A stretch of DNA of 62,373 nucleotides, filler included, from Platydemus manokwari (Eukaryota): NCBI GenBank assembly GCA_037951405.1. It is 6 parts of 6 records of this genome, joined end to end, with 100 filler letters (N's around TTAATTAATTAA, not from the genome) between each part and the next. Parts side by side here need not be neighbours in the genome. Positions count along the whole stretch, not along the records: positions 1 to 14,463 come from JBBMOY011455865.1; 5 more parts are not named here. One strand, written 5' to 3'. Made by a program: the position numbers and the translations under genes. Below are positions 1-7,932 of the stretch, in pieces; position 1 is the first letter of the stretch; the number at the start of each line of letters is the position of its first letter. Under the pieces are notes generated by a model. It did no database searches. It was not told where the DNA came from and worked only from the letters and a program-made list of their open reading frames with translations.

Positions 1-127
1 AATTTCATTAAATAAATATTTTAAAAAATGTTTTTGTTTTTTAAAAAAAAGCCGGAATCATACTAATACACCTAATAGTTTTTTGGTTACTTCTTACTAC
101 CAATGCTTTGTATGCCAATAACAATTT

Positions 128-1140
128 AGTTACATCATTAACATTTGCAGACATAATATTTATTTAAAAAACTAAACTAATCCGCCAACCACGTTACTCA
201 TCTCTCTTAAGCCCCACTTCATCGTTTCAGCCACTTTAATCGACTGGATTTTTTCGCGTGTGGGAATTGAATCTCTACTTGTTTGTCTGACTTGAATCCG
301 GTAATTCGATAGGGTTCCGTGCTTTGATAGTATGTGGTGGTTTATAATTACTGGACTCGTTGGTTTCTTTTCTGAACTGGTTATTCCACTGGTTGCTTCT
401 TCCAGTTTTTAGAGCTTGAGCATCGCTGTCTCTACGTATTGTACTAACTGCCTGGAAATCTCATTGCAAACTTTGTTCTGGATTCTCGAAGACCTTTGCA
501 GCACTCTTAATTTCTATTATATCCATGTCTGGCTTTAGGGCAAGAACGTCTTTCAACCCATTTGATCGTGTTCTCTTGCTGATGATATCTTTCACTATTG
601 AATCTTGCTTCAATTCGGAATTCATCACCGCCTCAACCAATCGGTGAACTCTCATCTCGAAGATGGCAAACCGTTCGCTCTCCGATTATTGAACATTTGC
701 AAATTTGACAATCATACCCATTATAGATTTTTTGACTGTGAGCGTATCTTCAAACCATGACTTAGCTGACTCTTCTGTGGTGTATCGTGATTTGAAATTT
801 TTCCACAGAATACCTGCCTCATCTAAAAGCAGCAAATCGAATGCGCTAATCAGGCTGAGACTATTAATTGATATTCTTTCTTCTGTATACCGTATGCACT
901 TTGCGGTCTCATTTGCATTTCTTCCATCAAATTTTCGAATATTGAAATTAAGGGCTTTCTGTGTTTGTTTCAGTGAGCTCTCCAGTAGCTGCTTCTTCTG
1001 CTGATTCCTTGTAATTGCATTGATTTATATGACGTGGTCACCAGTTGCATCATTAACATTCGCAGACATTATATTTATTTAAAAAACTGAACTAATTCGC
1101 CAATAAATTAGTTAAACAAAAATAATGTTTGCTTATTTCT
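128..1140 (-). mobile_element. Internally deleted Ty3/gypsy LTR retrotransposon (copy 1): short LTRs, gag relic fused directly to the end of pol
   Basis: LTR-like direct repeats at 128-198 and 1043-~1140. On the minus strand the LTR ends ...GATGYAACT, overlapping a PBS TGGTGACCACG (1033-1043). A purine-rich tract precedes the 3' LTR. ORF 461-655 (RVHRLVEAVMNSELKQDSIVKDIISKRTRSNGLKD) is homologous to ORF 17702-18013 of copy 2. Confidence 0.85.
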
Positions 1141-1780
1141 GGTCATCAATGTTTCGAATCAAACTTTGGATGATTAGTTTTTTGTTTACTTCAGTCTATC
1201 CATGCTCTGTATGCCTGTATTCGCAGACATTATATTTATTTAACCAGATTCATACTTGATTAATATTGTGTATTTGTCAGCTTGCTTTATCTAAATTCTT
1301 TTCATCAAATTTTGGACATTGAAATTTAATATATACTGAACTTGTTTCGAGAGCTTGTCAAATAACTTCTTCTGGTACTGCTATTTTTGTGAGCGTGTGA
1401 ATCAAAACGACATTGTAATCAATAAAATATTGTTTAAATGTTTAATGTAACCTGTCATAATCATAAACTTTATTTACTTAATCTACTCTTTAAGCACACA
1501 TCACTTTCTACTATTTTAATGTTAAGATTTATTAATAATAATAATATTAATTTATCGTGACAGTTTTTATCATTATATGATTAATTGTATATTAAATATT
1601 ATACTTATAAAATTATAACAATGATAACATTATACCATTTAAACCATATTTGTTTTATTATTTATTAATATTTTGTACATATTTAGACTTTTACCAGTGC
1701 GCGAAAATTTTCTATGCCGACCGATTTTTAAAGTTAAAATTTTAATTATAATAAACTGGCAATTTAACTATTTATCATAG

Positions 1781-4700
1781 AATGCAAGCAGAATAACGAG
1801 ATATGAGATAGAGAAGCTTTTCGGTGTATATGATCAGGTACCTGTAAATAATTTTATTAAAAGATGTTTCGAATACAAGATATGAGACAATATTTTATTT
1901 TCCTATTCTAATTCCAGTAATGCACTTCAAGAGTTTTCTCAAATACTTTTAAGATATTCGATAGTTTGCATGGAAATATGTTATAAAATTTTACTTGGTT
2001 CTTATAAATGAAGTACGGTGTTGCAAAAGATACCTTTTATGAAATAGATCTACACACCATATCAAAATAATGAAATCAAACACATTTAATCTAATTGGCA
2101 TATAAATTCTATTCACATTTCTGTTTGGTTTTCCATAATAGTGTAAGTACAAACAGTAGTAATCACGAGTCATTTTCTGAACTAAAAATTAGTCTGATCT
2201 GTCGTAATATTCGTGAAACGAAAAAATTATGCCAAAAATAATCAATAAAATATAGTGCTCTATTAGCAGATATATATCAGTTTTCTACTTGACCTTTTGA
2301 ATGTCTTGTTATTTGCCCCCATGGATGATGTAAGGATTTATAATAAAAAAGATTAATTTGTTTTAATAATTTTAATTAAAATGCAATTCGATATCTTGGG
2401 TTTTTAGTTTTTTTTCAATGGGTGCTTTATGAAGTAGTAGCTTTTTACATGACAACCACGCACTTGAATTCAATTCTGAGAATGTCCATGGCATGGAAGC
2501 ATAGAAAAAAAGGTGGAAGATATGAAGAATATATAGAAAAGATGTGGTGACGAAAAAAGTGAAGATATAGAGAATATATAGGGAAGTTATTAAACAGATA
2601 TAGAGATGATGTGAAGAAATGAAATAATGGAATTTTTATTAACGTGAATTTTATTTGGAGATTTTGATATAGAGGTAATTTAAAATTCTGAAAATCAAAG
2701 ATTTTAAGGAAATTGGGGTGTGAGGATTTCTAATAAATTGAAATTTGAGTAATTGTAATTAAGTACATAATTTGGTGTTGTTCGATTTTTCAGTTTGTTT
2801 TTAATGTGTGCTTTATAAAATAGCAGAGTGGCTTATAGATGACATTATTGTTGGTAATATTGAAATAGAGATAAAGGTAAAATTAAGAAAACATGCTAAA
2901 TGAATGAATATTTTGATCACGAATACATGATTTAACCAACATAAAATATCAAATTGTTAAACAGTATTCGGTCGAACTTGGATTTTGTTTAACTTCAACT
3001 ACTTTTGATCAATTTAAGGATCAAGATTTTTTACAAAATTCATTAATATTATTGTAATGAATTTAATGTTGGAGAATCAATTTATTTGCCATATTTTAAC
3101 CGATTTCAATCATGTACAACAACCTTGTCTAGAGTTGAATTGAACAATATTTTGGTTCTTTAAATCATATATTGTTATTATATGAAAATTTATTCTTTTA
3201 CATGAAATCTTTTAAGAATTATATTTGTTTATGCGAGGATAATTTTACTAACTAATTATGATGTAATGAATTTATTTCTGAAATAATGTTTGAAATCAAA
3301 AATTGTATGTGATACAATAATGCAGTGGAATGGATAAATCATGACTTAGATGAAACGAGAAAGTGAAAATATATTGAAATAACGAGACGCTATTTTGAAA
3401 TTTAGGTTAATGAACGGATAATTAAAGCAGTGAGTAATAAAGATGAAACAAGACATTGAGGTTAATACGTTTAGAAAGATTAGAAAGAAATTAAAAGATT
3501 AAAAATAATTATATTTCTATATGCTATTAAAGATGGTGTGAGAAATGTAGGGAAAGTAAAAGATTTTATGGAACAGTAATGTAAGGAATATTTTCAAAAA
3601 GAAAAACGTACATTTATATTTTTATCTAAGAAATATTATCGACTCAATAAAATCATTTAAAGAATTATTTAGTGTGAAGTGATATTGGATAAAAGATTGT
3701 ATTCTTGTAATTAAGTCTTTTGATTTTAAATCTGATCTTGGAATCAATAAAATTACTAGTAAAGTAATACTTATATTACAGTTTCTAATAACGGTTAATG
3801 TATGTACATCAAACTTCATTACTCTACTCAATTTAGATTTAATAAATACTATGCATTATCCCAACATTGCTTTATAAAACTTTGTCCTTTCGAACCTATT
3901 CAACAAAATCACACATTTTTTAAGATAATCAGAATTTGCTAAAAATTTCATGGGGATCATCTTAAAGATTATATATTGTGTAATCTTATCAACTGACAAA
4001 TTATGTTCAAATTTCAAATGATATATTGGCTGGGCCAAAGTTGAAACCCAAGTTTTATTTTCTGAAGACTAAGGTTTGATAATGGCCTCTTTTTCCTGGC
4101 CTCAAAGAAATAAGTAACATGATGTTCAATTCAAAAGATTTCCTCAACGTCTTATCCAACGGTTTTGAAAATGATGATTCAAATAGATGATGACGAATCA
4201 GAAATGTGGTTCCATTTTTGTCATAGAGATTGATTGAATGTGATTTTTAGCTTTTTGTATAATTTAGCTTCTATGCTGCTGAAGAATTTAGAAATAGTAT
4301 TAATCGTATGTACTAATTTATATATTTATTGTTCTCTGATTTGAAAATTAATTTGATTTACAATATCATTACAGGATCATAGTGGAACAATTGAAAATGA
4401 AGAATTGGATGGATTTCTAAAGGATTTGATGGAAATAGTTCAAGAGGTAATATCTTAGTTATATATATATGTGTGTGTGTGTGTGTCTCAAATAAAATTA
4501 ATTTAATTAATAATTTTTATTTAAAAACTTAAAATATAAAAATGTTTCTTCAGGTTTGTAAGAATTTTTAAATGAATTACATTTTTTAAAGTTTTAATTC
4601 AAATTTATATAAAATTATATTAATTTGTTTATATAATTGTATTTAAATATATAATTTGATGTCGTGACTTTTCAGTTCGTTTTAAATGCTTGCTACATAA

Positions 4701-6781
4701 TGCAAATGATAGGTCCGAAATATTTAATTAAGATGTTAATTACTTATAATTCATTAAGTGAAATCGAAAATTATAGTCATCAATGTTTAATCTAGATCAG
4801 AGGTGGCCAATTTTTGTGTACGTAAGATCGAATTTTCATTTGAATAATATCTCACGCGATAGACTAAAATTGGCTTCAAGATCGACCGGTTGGCCACCCC
4901 TGATCTAGATAACACGAATAATCAATTGAGTAGTTTTATTTGTCGATTTATTGTTAGATTAATAATGTAATAGTAATTCTGCTATAATTGTACAACATCT
5001 AGAATGTATACCAGCCCTACAATTAACAATACTGCTATTGTTTCATTAAATTTGAAACGTGAAATATTAAATATCAATATTTCTAGTTTCTTATTTCATT
5101 TCAAAATCGATTTTCCAATTTGTGTGTCAAAAAGGGACTTTTAAGTTAATTATGCAAATATCTGTATTAGACAAATTCTCTTGTATATTGTACATTGCAT
5201 TGTAATAATTAGAATGTTTTGGGTTTTTTTTAACTACTGATAATGACAACTTTTGATTGGATGAAATGGTGTGATAATTTAAATGATTAGGTAAGAATGA
5301 TCAGTTAATTTTAAAACTTTCGAATGTATGATAACAAAATTATTCATTAATTTTTTGAGTCCACTTTGTATGAAATTAAAGATGGAAAATATATACCAAC
5401 ATTACACTAATAATCATATTTAGATTCCAAATTTTTCATATAAAGATACAGAATTTATAAGGCACTTGTGTGTATATTACAAGAACGTATTAGTTGAAAT
5501 ATATCAATTTATTGATACTAAAGCTTAGATTGAATGTATAAGTTTGATTGATTAACTTTTAATAATCTAGTGAGTCAGTTCCTCAGTTCGGTTTTCCATT
5601 TTATAAATGGTGTGCTGTTGGAAATATTTATGTGAGGATTTAAAATGAATTGAAATTTGAAAATTCAATTTTTTATAAAATATTTATTTATTTGAATCAT
5701 TGTGATTAAAATAGAAAATTCAGTTCGTTTTCAACGAGTGCTTCATAAAATAGTAACGGCTTACATGGTAACCATGCATCTGGATTCAATTCTGAGAATG
5801 TCTATAGAATTGAAGTATGGAAGAGAATGAGGAAAATATTGAAACGATGTAAAGAAGATAAAGTGAAGTTATATAATAAGGTGTTGAGAAGAAAAGGTTA
5901 ATATAGTGAGAAGATTTAAATTAGATAAAGAAGAGACATTTTATGTAGATAAATATCTAGAGAATTTGATTCAGAGATGATTAATAATTCAGAGAAAAGC
6001 TATGGTTTTAAAGAAAGAAGGGTGTGAGGATTTAAGAGAAATTGAAATTTGAAGAATCTTATAATCAAATTTTTATAAAATATTTATTTGTTTGAATCAT
6101 TGCAATTAAAATATAATTTGATGTCATGAATTTTCAGTTTGTTTTCAATGCATGTTTTATAAAATAGTAGCGGCTTTCAATTTATATGATTCTTGAAGTT
6201 AGGTTTTTAATCATAAAGTCTTACAACTTGAGCTCGAAAAGAAAGTTTTATTCTTTTAAAATTTGTATTTTTAATTAAAAATTACTTACTGTTTTATAAT
6301 TGATCTTTTCATGGGCCAGTTGTTGTTATTGATTTATTTGATTACGGCATTTCCTTAAATGTGGGGAGTTATGTAATGACTGAGTATCACCATACAAGCA
6401 CACAATAACAGGCATGCAAATTATTTATCTTCACAAAAGGTCTCAACTTCCCATATTAGACACAAGGCGATTTTTGAGCCAAAATTTGGTAAATAAGTCC
6501 TTCATATATGCCGTCAAATACGCTAATTATTTTCTATATTATTTTGCTTTAATATTAATTTTATTTAATTTAAATTTTTCAATTCCTAAGATCATTATTA
6601 TTATTATTATTATTATTTGCTCTAGGACTATGATGACCATGACTTGCAATTCTTAAAGAAAACGCTTCTCAGTCAATGGAATAAAAGTGCAGATGCGAAA
6701 ATAACCAAAGACGATTTACAATTAATTCTGACCCAACAAAATCGTTTGTATCAATCAGAACTCAGTCTTCGGAAACAATGA
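1781..6781 (+). CDS. Calbindin-32/secretagogin/calretinin-family EF-hand protein, last three coding exons (1781-1837, 4375-4446, 6626-6781); 5' part lies outside the window
   Basis: Three AG/GT-bounded phase-0 exons splice to NASRITRYEIEKLFGVYDQ|DHSGTIENEELDGFLKDLMEIVQE|DYDDHDLQFLKKTLLSQWNKSADAKITKDDLQLILTQQNRLYQSELSLRKQ*. Contains the canonical EF loop DQDHSGTIENEE and resembles the C-terminus of Drosophila calbindin-32 as I recall it. AATAAA at 6906-6911. Confidence 0.88.
2329..2837 (+). mobile_element. TRIM-like non-autonomous LTR mini-retrotransposon, complete copy A
   Basis: LTRs 2329-2449 (TGTAAGGATT...TTACA) and 2719-2837 (TGTGAGGATT...TTATA). Degenerate PBS TGACAACCACG at 2450. Purine-rich tract before the 3' LTR. 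Perfect 5-bp TSD GATGA (2324-2328 and 2838-2842). No ORF. Confidence 0.85.
4557..4700 (+). mobile_element. Truncated solo LTR of the TRIM family
   Basis: Starts TGTAAGAATTTTTAAATGAATT and contains ATAATTTGATGTCGTGACTTTTCAGTTCGTTTT, shared with the TRIM LTRs; the 3' end is eroded. Confidence 0.6.
4798..4902. mobile_element. hAT-superfamily (Charlie/Buster-like) MITE, 105 bp
   Basis: TIRs CAGAGGTGGCCAA and TTGGCCACCCCTG; perfect 8-bp TSD ATCTAGAT (4790-4797 and 4903-4910) with a central TA. Confidence 0.9.
5631..6179 (+). mobile_element. TRIM-like non-autonomous LTR mini-retrotransposon, complete copy B
   Basis: LTRs 5631-5765 and 6023-6179, both TG...CA. PBS TGGTAACCATG immediately after the 5' LTR (5766-5776). 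PPT AAAGAAAGAAGGG (6010-6022). Perfect 5-bp TSD ATTTA (5626-5630 and 6180-6184). Internal region homologous to copy A. Confidence 0.9.
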
Positions 6782-7293: not shown

Positions 7294-7932
7294 TTGTATT
7301 ATATGCGGGGGTATATGGTTAAAACAATCAAGATACCTATGGCGACCACGGAATTACCTTTAAGGGCTCGATACACAGATACGATGTGCACACGAGTCAG
7401 TAGCCAATCAGGTGTCTCCAAAATATTATTAAACAATTATAATTCGATCTTCAATTGGCTCACACCAAAAACAACCAGCGAACATGAGGGTCCGCTAATG
7501 GTATGAGAGATAGAAGAGAATCTGTCGACAAGCTAGGTTTTAGACAGCGCTGACGGATTAAGACCAAAGCTGCAAGATAGTAGGTAAGCGCATACGACAA
7601 GTCTAAAAAGGTATTTAATCTCGAGAGCAACTATCAATAATTAATGGTTGTATATGTTGTAATTCTTTATGTGATGACGACCAGTCTTTTGTAATTGTTG
7701 ATTTCTATCGCTGTTTTATCCTTCGGGTTGTAATATTGTTGTGATTCATTGATAGATCTTGTCATTAAGAGTGATTTAGAGCAGGAAAGTTGGAAATTTA
7801 ATTTTAAATTGAACAATTGTGATTTGCAATCATAGTTTTCGATACTTCGAGTTAGTATATATCTGTCATATACATAGAGTTAAATTTAATGAATTCTTCA
7901 TATATAATTGGTTTCCAAATGTGACAATAACA
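7294..7932. mobile_element. Possible solo LTR of an unrelated retroelement
   Basis: GC-richer non-coding island with approximate inverted termini (TTGTATT...AATAACA) and a near-perfect 5-bp flanking repeat ACGGC/ACGAC; no second copy in the window. Confidence 0.35.

What the first reader, a model, noticed from the sequence alone, without database searches (positions are those of the whole stretch)
2329..6179. Family of ~0.5-kb non-coding LTR mini-retrotransposons (TRIM-like): two complete copies in calbindin introns
Seen in sequence: two independent insertions (2329-2837 and 5631-6179), each with 120-160 bp LTRs, a PBS directly after the 5' LTR, a ~260-bp non-coding purine-rich interior, a PPT and a different perfect 5-bp TSD (GATGA; ATTTA). 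Three solo LTRs (4557, 17507, 20930) bring the total to five loci in 21 kb. Established: this is the architecture of TRIMs, which borrow gag/pol in trans, and a TRIM expressed in stem cells has been reported in taeniid tapeworms. Inference: this is a high-copy parasitic retroelement family that may be unannotated. I cannot confirm novelty without a search.
Basis: partly seen in the sequence, partly recalled or inferred. Interest (0 to 1): 0.75.

Follow-up and report, generated by a model that had tools for sequence, protein, structure and literature searches.

The report
Miniature LTR retrotransposon (TRIM) family
The two ~0.5-kb repeats are real copies of a non-coding miniature LTR retrotransposon (TRIM) family with thousands of copies in this AT-rich animal genome, primed by the host's arginine tRNA; it is a well-known kind of genomic parasite, apparently a new family of it, and mostly old.

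Summary
E1 (2329-2837, TSD GATGA) and E2 (5631-6179, TSD ATTTA) are LTR-interior-LTR elements with TG..CA termini, a primer-binding site directly after the 5' LTR, a purine tract before the 3' LTR and no coding capacity.

They belong to a large family in the 911-Mb genome:
- An interior motif occurs 4,527 times against 41 in the control. An LTR motif occurs 9,527 times against 217.
- Among 23 independent complete copies, 12 have a 5-bp target duplication matching at 4 or 5 positions. None of the shifted controls does.
- The two LTRs of one element are more alike (0.84) than LTRs of different elements (0.80).
- The intact primer site TGGCGACCACGC is the exact complement of the 3' end plus CCA of a host tRNA-Arg(ACG) gene.
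- There are at least three subfamilies: A (the window's, old), B (at least 1,416 copies) and C (about 93 copies, younger).

This is a TRIM by every testable criterion. It is not the taeniid or ant family (both tRNA-Leu, 4-bp TSD) and carries no small-RNA gene in its LTR.

No autonomous partner was found. Expression could not be tested because no RNA runs exist. Novelty against Repbase or Dfam could not be checked. I rate it a new member of a known kind, of modest interest.

The parts
2324..2328 (+). E1 target-site duplication, left copy (GATGA)
2329..2449 (+). E1 5' LTR (121 nt, TGT...ACA; carries deletions relative to other copies)
2450..2461 (+). E1 primer-binding site, decayed (TGACAACCACGC; 9 of 12 match the intact TGGCGACCACGC)
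2466..2482 (+). E1 conserved leader motif (GAATTCAATTCTGAGAA)
2516..2610 (+). E1 interior array of 11-nt purine-rich repeats (GAAGATATAGA, 8.5 copies)
2706..2718 (+). E1 polypurine tract (AAGGAAATTGGGG)
2719..2837 (+). E1 3' LTR (119 nt)
2838..2842 (+). E1 target-site duplication, right copy (GATGA)
4557..4710 (+). Solo or truncated LTR of the same family. It starts TGTAAG. Positions 4596-4700 are 81% identical to the E2 LTR. The 3' end is degraded and there is no clean TSD.
5626..5630 (+). E2 target-site duplication, left copy (ATTTA)
5631..5765 (+). E2 5' LTR (135 nt, TGTGAGG...CTTACA)
5766..5777 (+). E2 primer-binding site, decayed (TGGTAACCATGC). All three differences from TGGCGACCACGC are transitions at its two CG dinucleotides.
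5782..5798 (+). E2 conserved leader motif (GGATTCAATTCTGAGAA)
5766..6022 (+). E2 non-coding interior (257 nt, 67% purine)
6010..6022 (+). E2 polypurine tract (AAAGAAAGAAGGG)
6023..6179 (+). E2 3' LTR (157 nt)
6180..6184 (+). E2 target-site duplication, right copy (ATTTA)

Best explanation
E1, E2 and the fragment at 4557 are copies of a non-autonomous, non-coding LTR retrotransposon family of the TRIM type.

Inferred life cycle:
1. An RNA is transcribed from the 5' LTR into the 3' LTR.
2. It is packaged by the Gag of some autonomous LTR element.
3. Host tRNA-Arg(ACG) anneals to the 12-nt primer-binding site next to the 5' LTR and primes minus-strand DNA.
4. The purine tract primes the plus strand.
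5. A borrowed integrase inserts the cDNA at a 5-bp staggered cut.

Shown here: the architecture, the exact PBS-tRNA complementarity, the PPT, the 5-bp TSDs, LTR pairs that are closer within elements than between them, thousands of dispersed copies, and subfamilies of different ages.

Inferred, not shown: transcription, packaging in trans, and which element supplies the proteins.

The window's copies belong to the oldest subfamily and are decayed relics. Their PBS is mutated and their LTR pairs are 12-20% diverged.
For: Layout: LTR (about 120-180 nt), interior (about 215-350 nt), LTR is seen in every locus fetched.

TSD test on 23 non-tandem complete copies: 4 match at 5 of 5 positions, 8 at 4 of 5, 6 at 3 of 5. 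A control using shifted 5-mers gave no score of 4 or more. A further copy, L061, has a perfect ATATC duplication by eye.

LTR identity: the within-element mean is 0.837 and the between-element mean 0.80. In 14 of 23 elements at most 2 of the 22 foreign LTRs match as well as the element's own partner LTR.

Primer site: the intact PBS TGGCGACCACGC sits directly after ...TTACA in 158 copies, with 0 in the control. It equals the reverse complement of GCGTGGTCG+CCA, the 3' end of a host tRNA at L035 311-365. That tRNA scores 36.8 bits against Rfam tRNA (threshold 29), has anticodon loop CUACGGA and is followed by a T-run.

Purine tract: AAAGAAAGGGGGA-like, immediately before TGTGAGG.

Genome counts: the leader 17-mer with up to 2 mismatches occurs 4,527 times against 41 in the control. 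An LTR 19-mer occurs 9,527 times against 217.

Subfamily counts, 29-mers with up to 3 mismatches: A 268, B 1,416, C 93.

Age spread: type C copies are 88-96% alike and one has LTRs 94.8% identical, while type A copies are 70-76% alike.

Tandem LTR-interior-LTR-interior-LTR forms occur, as in other TRIMs (PMC4558846, PMC4528315).

No coding capacity.
Against: - No autonomous element with matching LTR ends was found.
- No RNA data exist, so transcription is untested.
- 5 of the 23 copies show 2 or fewer matching TSD positions, including the young L062 (seen again). This could reflect recombination between copies or boundary errors.
- The within-versus-between LTR difference is modest.
- The PBS match is only 12 nt.
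- U3, R and U5 boundaries, the promoter and the poly(A) signal were not mapped.
Confidence: 0.9

Rival explanations
1. The copies are deletion derivatives of a still-present autonomous LTR retrotransposon that shares the same LTRs, PBS and leader. On this view they form a LARD-to-TRIM series and not an independent lineage. The full-length parent would be hidden because the fragmented assembly breaks long repeats.
For: - The assembly has 1.99 million contigs averaging about 460 bp, so 5-10 kb repeats would rarely be assembled.
- The genome holds at least 1,997 integrase candidates, many with open frames above 1,000 aa, of the Ty3/gypsy type.
- The best-conserved parts of the TRIM are its two ends and the leader, which is what an internal deletion would leave.
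Against: - About 20 intact-PBS loci had more than 1.1 kb of downstream sequence. None of them showed coding sequence downstream of the primer site: about a dozen reach a recognisable second LTR within roughly 250-350 nt, and the rest show only the TRIM-type non-coding interior, some of it truncated.
- The 100 intact-PBS copies listed nearly all carry one of three TRIM-type leaders. A few have a partly deleted leader that runs straight into the purine-rich interior.
- Only a handful of singleton sites have 'CA + PBS' followed by something else.
- Thirty integrase loci (65 kb) show no similarity to the LTR, PBS or leader.
Confidence: 0.25
2. The repeat is a dispersed minisatellite or satellite with a unit of about 400 bp (LTR plus interior), spread by recombination or segmental duplication and not by reverse transcription.
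For: - Several contigs carry head-to-tail LTR-interior-LTR-interior-LTR arrays (L002, L014, L018, L025).
- LTR-to-interior motif counts are close to 2:1, and arrays would also give about 1:1 to 2:1.
Against: - Most copies are exactly 1.4 units long (LTR-interior-LTR), bounded by TG..CA, and flanked by unrelated sequence with 5-bp duplications.
- There is a tRNA-complementary PBS and a PPT at precisely the positions reverse transcription requires.
- Short tandem forms are known by-products of unequal crossing-over in TRIMs (PMC4558846, PMC4528315).
Confidence: 0.03
3. The family is a pol III-driven TRIM (TRIMp3: Cassandra, Helenus or Ajax type) whose LTR carries a tRNA- or 5S-derived promoter.
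For: - Such TRIMs exist in animals (PMC10886601).
- The leader after the PBS resembles the complement of a tRNA T arm.
Against: - A permissive Rfam search (E up to 1) and ARAGORN find no tRNA, 5S or other small-RNA similarity anywhere in E1, E2 or the solo LTR.
- The tRNA-like stretch is antisense and lies in the interior next to the PBS, not in the LTR.
Confidence: 0.02

Closest known systems
Plant TRIMs (Witte et al. 2001 type; for example Wukong in maize, PMC4528315)
   Same: Size of about 0.5 kb, LTRs of 100-250 bp, non-coding interior with PBS and PPT, 5-bp TSD, tandem LTR-interior-LTR-interior-LTR forms, frequent location in or near genes.
   Different: Plant TRIMs use a tRNA-Met PBS, as stated in PMC3532108. 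This family uses tRNA-Arg(ACG). The host here is an animal, and no sequence similarity is expected.
ta-TRIM of taeniid tapeworms (Koziol et al. 2015, PMC4558846)
   Same: An animal TRIM with thousands of LTR-related loci, mostly decayed copies, tandem forms, solo LTRs and insertions near or in genes. The candidate partner there was sought by the same logic of shared PBS, LTR ends and TSD length.
   Different: ta-TRIM has an 8-nt PBS for tRNA-Leu and 4-bp TSDs. This family has a 12-nt PBS for tRNA-Arg and 5-bp TSDs. The stem-cell expression reported there is untested here because no RNA runs exist.
PbTRIM of ants (Zhou and Cahan 2012, PMC3532108)
   Same: Elements of 480-781 bp, LTRs of 152-184 bp, non-coding, abundant, AT-rich surroundings, intronic and near-gene copies.
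   Different: PbTRIM has a tRNA-Leu PBS of about 15 nt and 4-bp TSDs, mostly ATAT. This family has tRNA-Arg and 5-bp TSDs with no evident consensus, and most copies are much older.
TRIMp3 (Cassandra, Helenus, Ajax; Kojima 2024, PMC10886601)
   Same: TRIM architecture. Ajax and the fungal and plant Helenus elements also make 5-bp TSDs.
   Different: Those carry a 5S- or tRNA-derived pol III promoter inside the LTR. None is detectable here.

Membership tests
TRIM (terminal-repeat retrotransposon in miniature) | Two direct terminal repeats of roughly 100-250 bp with TG...CA ends; whole element well under 1 kb | tested here: met
   E1 is 509 bp and E2 549 bp. The 41 copies measured are about 460-680 bp with LTRs of about 120-180 nt, longer only where the LTR minisatellite has expanded. 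Termini are TGTGAGG...CTTACA.
TRIM (terminal-repeat retrotransposon in miniature) | Primer-binding site complementary to the 3' end of a host tRNA, directly after the 5' LTR | tested here: met
   TGGCGACCACGC is the exact complement of GCGTGGTCG+CCA of a host tRNA-Arg(ACG) gene.
TRIM (terminal-repeat retrotransposon in miniature) | Polypurine tract directly before the 3' LTR | tested here: met
   An AAAGAAAGGGGGA-like tract abuts TGTGAGG in 14 of the 15 junctions listed.
TRIM (terminal-repeat retrotransposon in miniature) | No gag or pol coding capacity in the interior | tested here: met
   The interior is 215-350 nt and consists largely of 11-nt purine-rich repeats. There are no conserved open frames.
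TRIM (terminal-repeat retrotransposon in miniature) | Target-site duplications of fixed length around independent, dispersed copies | tested here: met
   5-bp TSDs match at 4 or 5 of 5 positions in 12 of 23 copies and in 0 of 23 shifted controls. Copies lie on thousands of different contigs.
TRIM (terminal-repeat retrotransposon in miniature) | Mobilised in trans by an autonomous LTR retrotransposon that shares LTR ends, PBS and TSD length | tested here: inconclusive
   No partner turned up in 30 integrase loci or among the intact-PBS sites. Two other LTR families share the PBS but not the LTR ends. Further genome sequence could not be fetched.
ta-TRIM (taeniid cestodes) | PBS for tRNA-Leu; 4-bp TSD | tested here: not met
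   This family has a tRNA-Arg PBS and a 5-bp TSD, against the description in PMC4558846.
PbTRIM (ants) | PBS for tRNA-Leu; 4-bp TSD, mostly ATAT | tested here: not met
   This family has a tRNA-Arg PBS and 5-bp TSDs of varied sequence, against PMC3532108.
TRIMp3 (Cassandra, Helenus, Ajax) | 5S rRNA- or tRNA-derived sequence with a pol III promoter inside the LTR | tested here: not met
   No Rfam match at E up to 1 and no ARAGORN hit in any LTR of the window.

The most novel reading that the evidence does not exclude
This may be a previously undescribed, long-lived animal TRIM lineage with no cognate autonomous element left. Amplification waves would run from type A (ancient) through type B (at least 1,400 copies) to type C (about 90 copies, 5-10% diverged).

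On this reading, propagation is by cross-mobilisation through unrelated Ty3/gypsy elements that merely share the tRNA-Arg(ACG) primer. It would be helped by an extended, bipartite primer site whose conserved leader (CTGGATTCGATTCTG) pairs with the T arm of the same tRNA.
Probability: 0.12. Interest if true: 0.5.

Novelty: new member of a known kind. Interest (0 to 1): 0.3.

Why it matters
For annotation, about 4,500 interiors and 9,500 LTRs of roughly 150-550 bp add up to a few megabases of repeat. Standard LTR finders, with their minimum LTR and element lengths, tend to miss such elements. They sit inside genes: here they make up about a third of one intron, together with a MITE.

Described TRIM families in animals are still few (ants, taeniid cestodes, bivalves, nemerteans and some Repbase entries). 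This one adds a well-defined case with a different primer tRNA and TSD length and with datable subfamilies.

It does not change how TRIMs are understood. The open biological questions are which element moves it and whether its LTRs act as promoters. Neither can be addressed with the data available here.

Tried and rejected
1. First guess for the primer tRNA. A pattern requiring both acceptor strands (GACCACG...CGTGGTCG) gave one chance hit. A 3'-end pattern then found the tRNA-Arg gene. ARAGORN missed it because the contig end cuts its 5' part. Rfam confirmed it.

2. Autonomous partner.
- The integrase (rve) search gave 150 scored hits. The 30 loci fetched show no similarity to the LTR, PBS or leader.
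I did not try to obtain that sequence by other tools.
- A pattern for 'CA + PBS' without the TRIM leader gave 27 sites, mostly mutated TRIMs plus a few singletons.
- A pattern for the PBS not preceded by A revealed two other LTR families with the same PBS. Their LTR ends differ, so they are not obvious partners.

3. Expression. The only public run holding this sequence is DNA contigs. Laying it showed repeat pile-ups only. No statement on transcription, stem cells or piRNAs is possible.

5. A literature search for the PBS string returned only unrelated plant marker primers.

6. A metagenome scan for PBS plus leader gave 0 hits.

7. Host identity. Pfam on window ORFs and an Atlas search with a pol ORF gave no usable taxon. 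The organism stays unknown, so I could not check species-specific repeat libraries.

8. Extended pairing of the leader with the tRNA T arm scores 13 of 15 pairs, but 4-5% of shuffles do as well. I keep it as a lead only.

9. The aligner printed a majority line by default. I did not use it.
Full report
OBSERVATION

E1 spans 2329-2837:
- 5' LTR at 2329-2449.
- Interior at 2450-2718.
- 3' LTR at 2719-2837.
- It is flanked by GATGA on both sides.

E2 spans 5631-6179:
- 5' LTR at 5631-5765.
- Interior at 5766-6022.
- 3' LTR at 6023-6179.
- It is flanked by ATTTA on both sides.

The LTRs begin TGT(G/A)AGG and end (C/T)TT(A/T)CA. In E1 the 3' LTR ends TTATA.

LTR pairs are 80% (E1) and 88% (E2) identical over aligned columns, with indels. 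The interiors are 66-67% purine, against 49% for the window. They contain an array of 11-nt GAAGATATAGA-like repeats.

No ORF of 45 aa or more with a start codon overlaps either element. The longer stop-free stretches are antisense, follow from the pyrimidine-rich complement, and are not shared by E1 and E2.

The LTR at 4557 is a partial or degraded solo LTR.

THE FAMILY

The window is one 14.5-kb contig of a 911-Mb assembly in 1.99 million contigs. GC content is about 25%.

E2 as a query gave more than 4,100 first-look candidates. The 50 matches scored are 68-87% identical to it (apart from the window's own copy), and the near-full-length ones 69-76%. Every fetched locus has the same order: LTR of about 150 nt, interior of about 250 nt, LTR. 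Some contigs carry LTR-interior-LTR-interior-LTR tandems (L002, L014, L018, L025).

Exhaustive motif counts:
- Interior leader GGATTCGATTCTGAGAA, up to 2 mismatches: 4,527 matches against 41 for the reversed control.
- An LTR 19-mer, up to 2 mismatches: 9,527 matches against 217.

That is about two LTRs per interior, so solo LTRs do not obviously dominate. The two motifs need not be equally sensitive.

TESTS OF RETROTRANSPOSITION

(a) Target-site duplications. I set boundaries by similarity to real copies in 23 non-tandem complete elements.
- The flanking 5-mers match at 5 of 5 positions in 4 elements, 4 of 5 in 8, 3 of 5 in 6, and 2 or fewer in 5.
- 5-mers shifted 7 nt outward never reach 4 of 5.
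- L061 has a perfect ATATC duplication once its expanded 5' LTR is read by eye.

(b) LTR identity. The two LTRs of one element average 0.837 identity. LTRs from different elements average 0.80. In 14 of 23 elements at most 2 of the 22 foreign LTRs match as well as the element's own partner. This is expected if the LTRs were identical at insertion and have decayed since.

(c) Primer-binding site. Across copies, the sequence after ...TTACA varies around TGGCGACCACGC. Most changes are transitions at its two CG dinucleotides.
- The intact 16-mer TACATGGCGACCACGC occurs 158 times and 0 times in the control.
- A pattern built from its complement found a host gene ending ...GGTTCGAGTCCTGGCGTGGTCG, followed by a T-run.
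- Rfam scores that gene as tRNA at 36.8 bits (threshold 29). Its 5' part is cut by the contig end, and the anticodon loop reads CUACGGA, which is Arg(ACG).
- With CCA added, its last 12 nt are the exact complement of the PBS.

(d) Polypurine tract. A tract such as AAAGAAAGGGGGA abuts the 3' LTR in nearly all copies.

(e) Conservation. Across 29 aligned copies, conservation is highest at the LTR ends and at the PBS and leader (0.85-0.89). It is lowest in the middle of the interior (0.59-0.75).

SUBFAMILIES AND AGE

The intact-PBS copies fall into three leader types. All three are short non-coding LTR-interior-LTR elements. Counts below are for 29-mers with up to 3 mismatches.

| Type | Copies | Exact matches |
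|---|---|---|
| A (includes E1 and E2) | 268 | 6 |
| B | 1,416 | 55 |
| C | 93 | 15 |

- Type A's mismatch spectrum is still rising at 3 mismatches. It is therefore old, and most of its members lie beyond the threshold.
- Type C copies are 88-96% identical to one another. One (L062) has LTRs 94.8% identical.
- Type C LTRs carry a 16-nt minisatellite that ranges from about 4 to 23.6 units, even between the two LTRs of one element (L061).

The lineage has therefore amplified repeatedly over a long time. The window's copies are relics. Nothing here shows present-day mobility.

WHAT IT IS NOT

It is not the taeniid ta-TRIM or the ant PbTRIM. Both use tRNA-Leu and make 4-bp TSDs.

It is not a pol III-type TRIM (Cassandra, Helenus, Ajax). 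A permissive Rfam search and ARAGORN find no small-RNA gene in the LTRs.

A satellite explanation fails on the TSDs, the defined termini and the PBS and PPT placement.

THE MISSING PARTNER

The genome is rich in Ty3/gypsy-type pol genes. There are at least 1,997 integrase candidates, many with open frames above 1,000 aa.

- The 30 loci I could fetch have no similarity to the TRIM LTR, PBS or leader.
- About 20 intact-PBS loci had more than 1.1 kb downstream. None showed coding sequence: about a dozen reach a second LTR within roughly 250-350 nt, and the rest show only the TRIM-type non-coding interior.
- Nearly every 'CA + PBS' site in the assembly carries the TRIM leader.

Two other LTR families use the same primer site but have different LTR ends:
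- Family X: ...TTTTAC|TGGCGACCACGCCGAAAT..., about 40 copies.
- Family Y...TGTAAC|TGGCGACCACGCCATACAAATCAA..., about 10 copies.

A decayed Y copy lies in this window on the minus strand. Sharing the primer tRNA is therefore not diagnostic in this genome, and the partner remains unidentified.

A POSSIBLE EXTRA FEATURE

In types B and C, the leader just after the PBS (CTGGATTCGATTCTG) can pair at 13 of 15 positions with the T arm of the same tRNA, collinear with the PBS pairing. However, 4-5% of shuffled leaders do as well. I report it as a lead, not a finding.

GENE CONTEXT

An EF-hand-like exon lies at 4375-4449, with a weak Pfam EF-hand match. It is followed by GT. A second open exon at 6626-6781 is preceded by AG and runs in frame to a stop.

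From memory only, the two peptides resemble the C-terminal part of insect calbindin-32. That recollection is a lead and not a test.

The intron 4450-6625 contains the solo LTR, a hAT-like MITE and E2. All TRIM copies are in the sense orientation. I found no exon upstream of E1 within the piece.

LIMITS

- There are no RNA runs. The one DNA run shows only repeat pile-ups.
- The host species is unknown to me.
- Repbase and Dfam are not available here.

VERDICT

This is a bona fide TRIM family, distinct from the described animal TRIMs in primer tRNA and TSD length. It is high-copy and mostly ancient.

I rate it a new member of a known kind, with interest about 0.3.

Noticed in passing
window 4790-4910: A hAT-like MITE. 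Its terminal inverted repeats are CAGAGGTGGCCAA (4798-4810) and TTGGCCACCCCTG (4890-4902). It is flanked by a perfect 8-bp duplication, ATCTAGAT. In the one DNA run it draws the largest pile-up of related contigs in the whole 4.1-kb stretch, so it is probably a very abundant family.
   Followed up: partly
window about 76-1215, minus strand: A second, unrelated LTR-type element (family Y). It has direct repeats at 128-188 and 1043-1103 (92% identical). A decayed tRNA-Arg primer site, TGGTGACCACGTC, lies at 1043-1031 directly after one repeat. Between the repeats is a GC-richer interior of about 850 nt with broken open frames and no Pfam match. About 10 intact relatives elsewhere read ...TGTAAC|TGGCGACCACGCCATACAAATCAA.
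   Followed up: partly
L024:2340-2400, and about 40 contigs listed: A third LTR family (X) with the same tRNA-Arg primer site, here 13 nt (TGGCGACCACGCC), after an LTR end ...TTTTAC and followed by GAAATWAAYGCTCT. Whether it is autonomous could not be checked.
   Followed up: no
L033:747-785 (plus-strand coordinates): A 39-nt stretch identical to the 3' part of tRNA-Arg(ACG), including an encoded CCA. It reaches back into the anticodon stem. On the other strand it sits directly after TTTTTAT, as the PBS does in family X. It looks like a relic of reverse transcriptase reading far into the primer tRNA, or a tRNA retro-fragment.
   Followed up: no
L061:1024-1403 versus 1811-1897: The LTR of the younger TRIM subfamily C carries a 16-nt minisatellite (GATATTAAATTTAGTT). 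One element has 23.6 units in its 5' LTR and about 4-5 in its 3' LTR. LTR length is therefore unstable after insertion.
   Followed up: partly
window 7340-7351: TGGCGACCACGG, an 11-of-12 match to the same primer-site sequence, lies inside a GC-richer stretch with a 70-aa open frame (7294-7506). This may be another decayed retroelement or chance.
   Followed up: no
genome-wide; for example L083, L074, L085, L076: Many Ty3/gypsy-type pol genes have uninterrupted frames above 1,000 aa. The genome therefore probably still has active autonomous LTR retrotransposons that could supply proteins in trans.
   Followed up: partly
window 4375-4449 and 6626-6781: Two consecutive phase-0 exons of an EF-hand (calbindin-like) gene. 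About a third of the 2.2-kb intron between them is transposon-derived: the solo LTR, the MITE and E2, with all TRIM copies in the sense orientation.
   Followed up: partly
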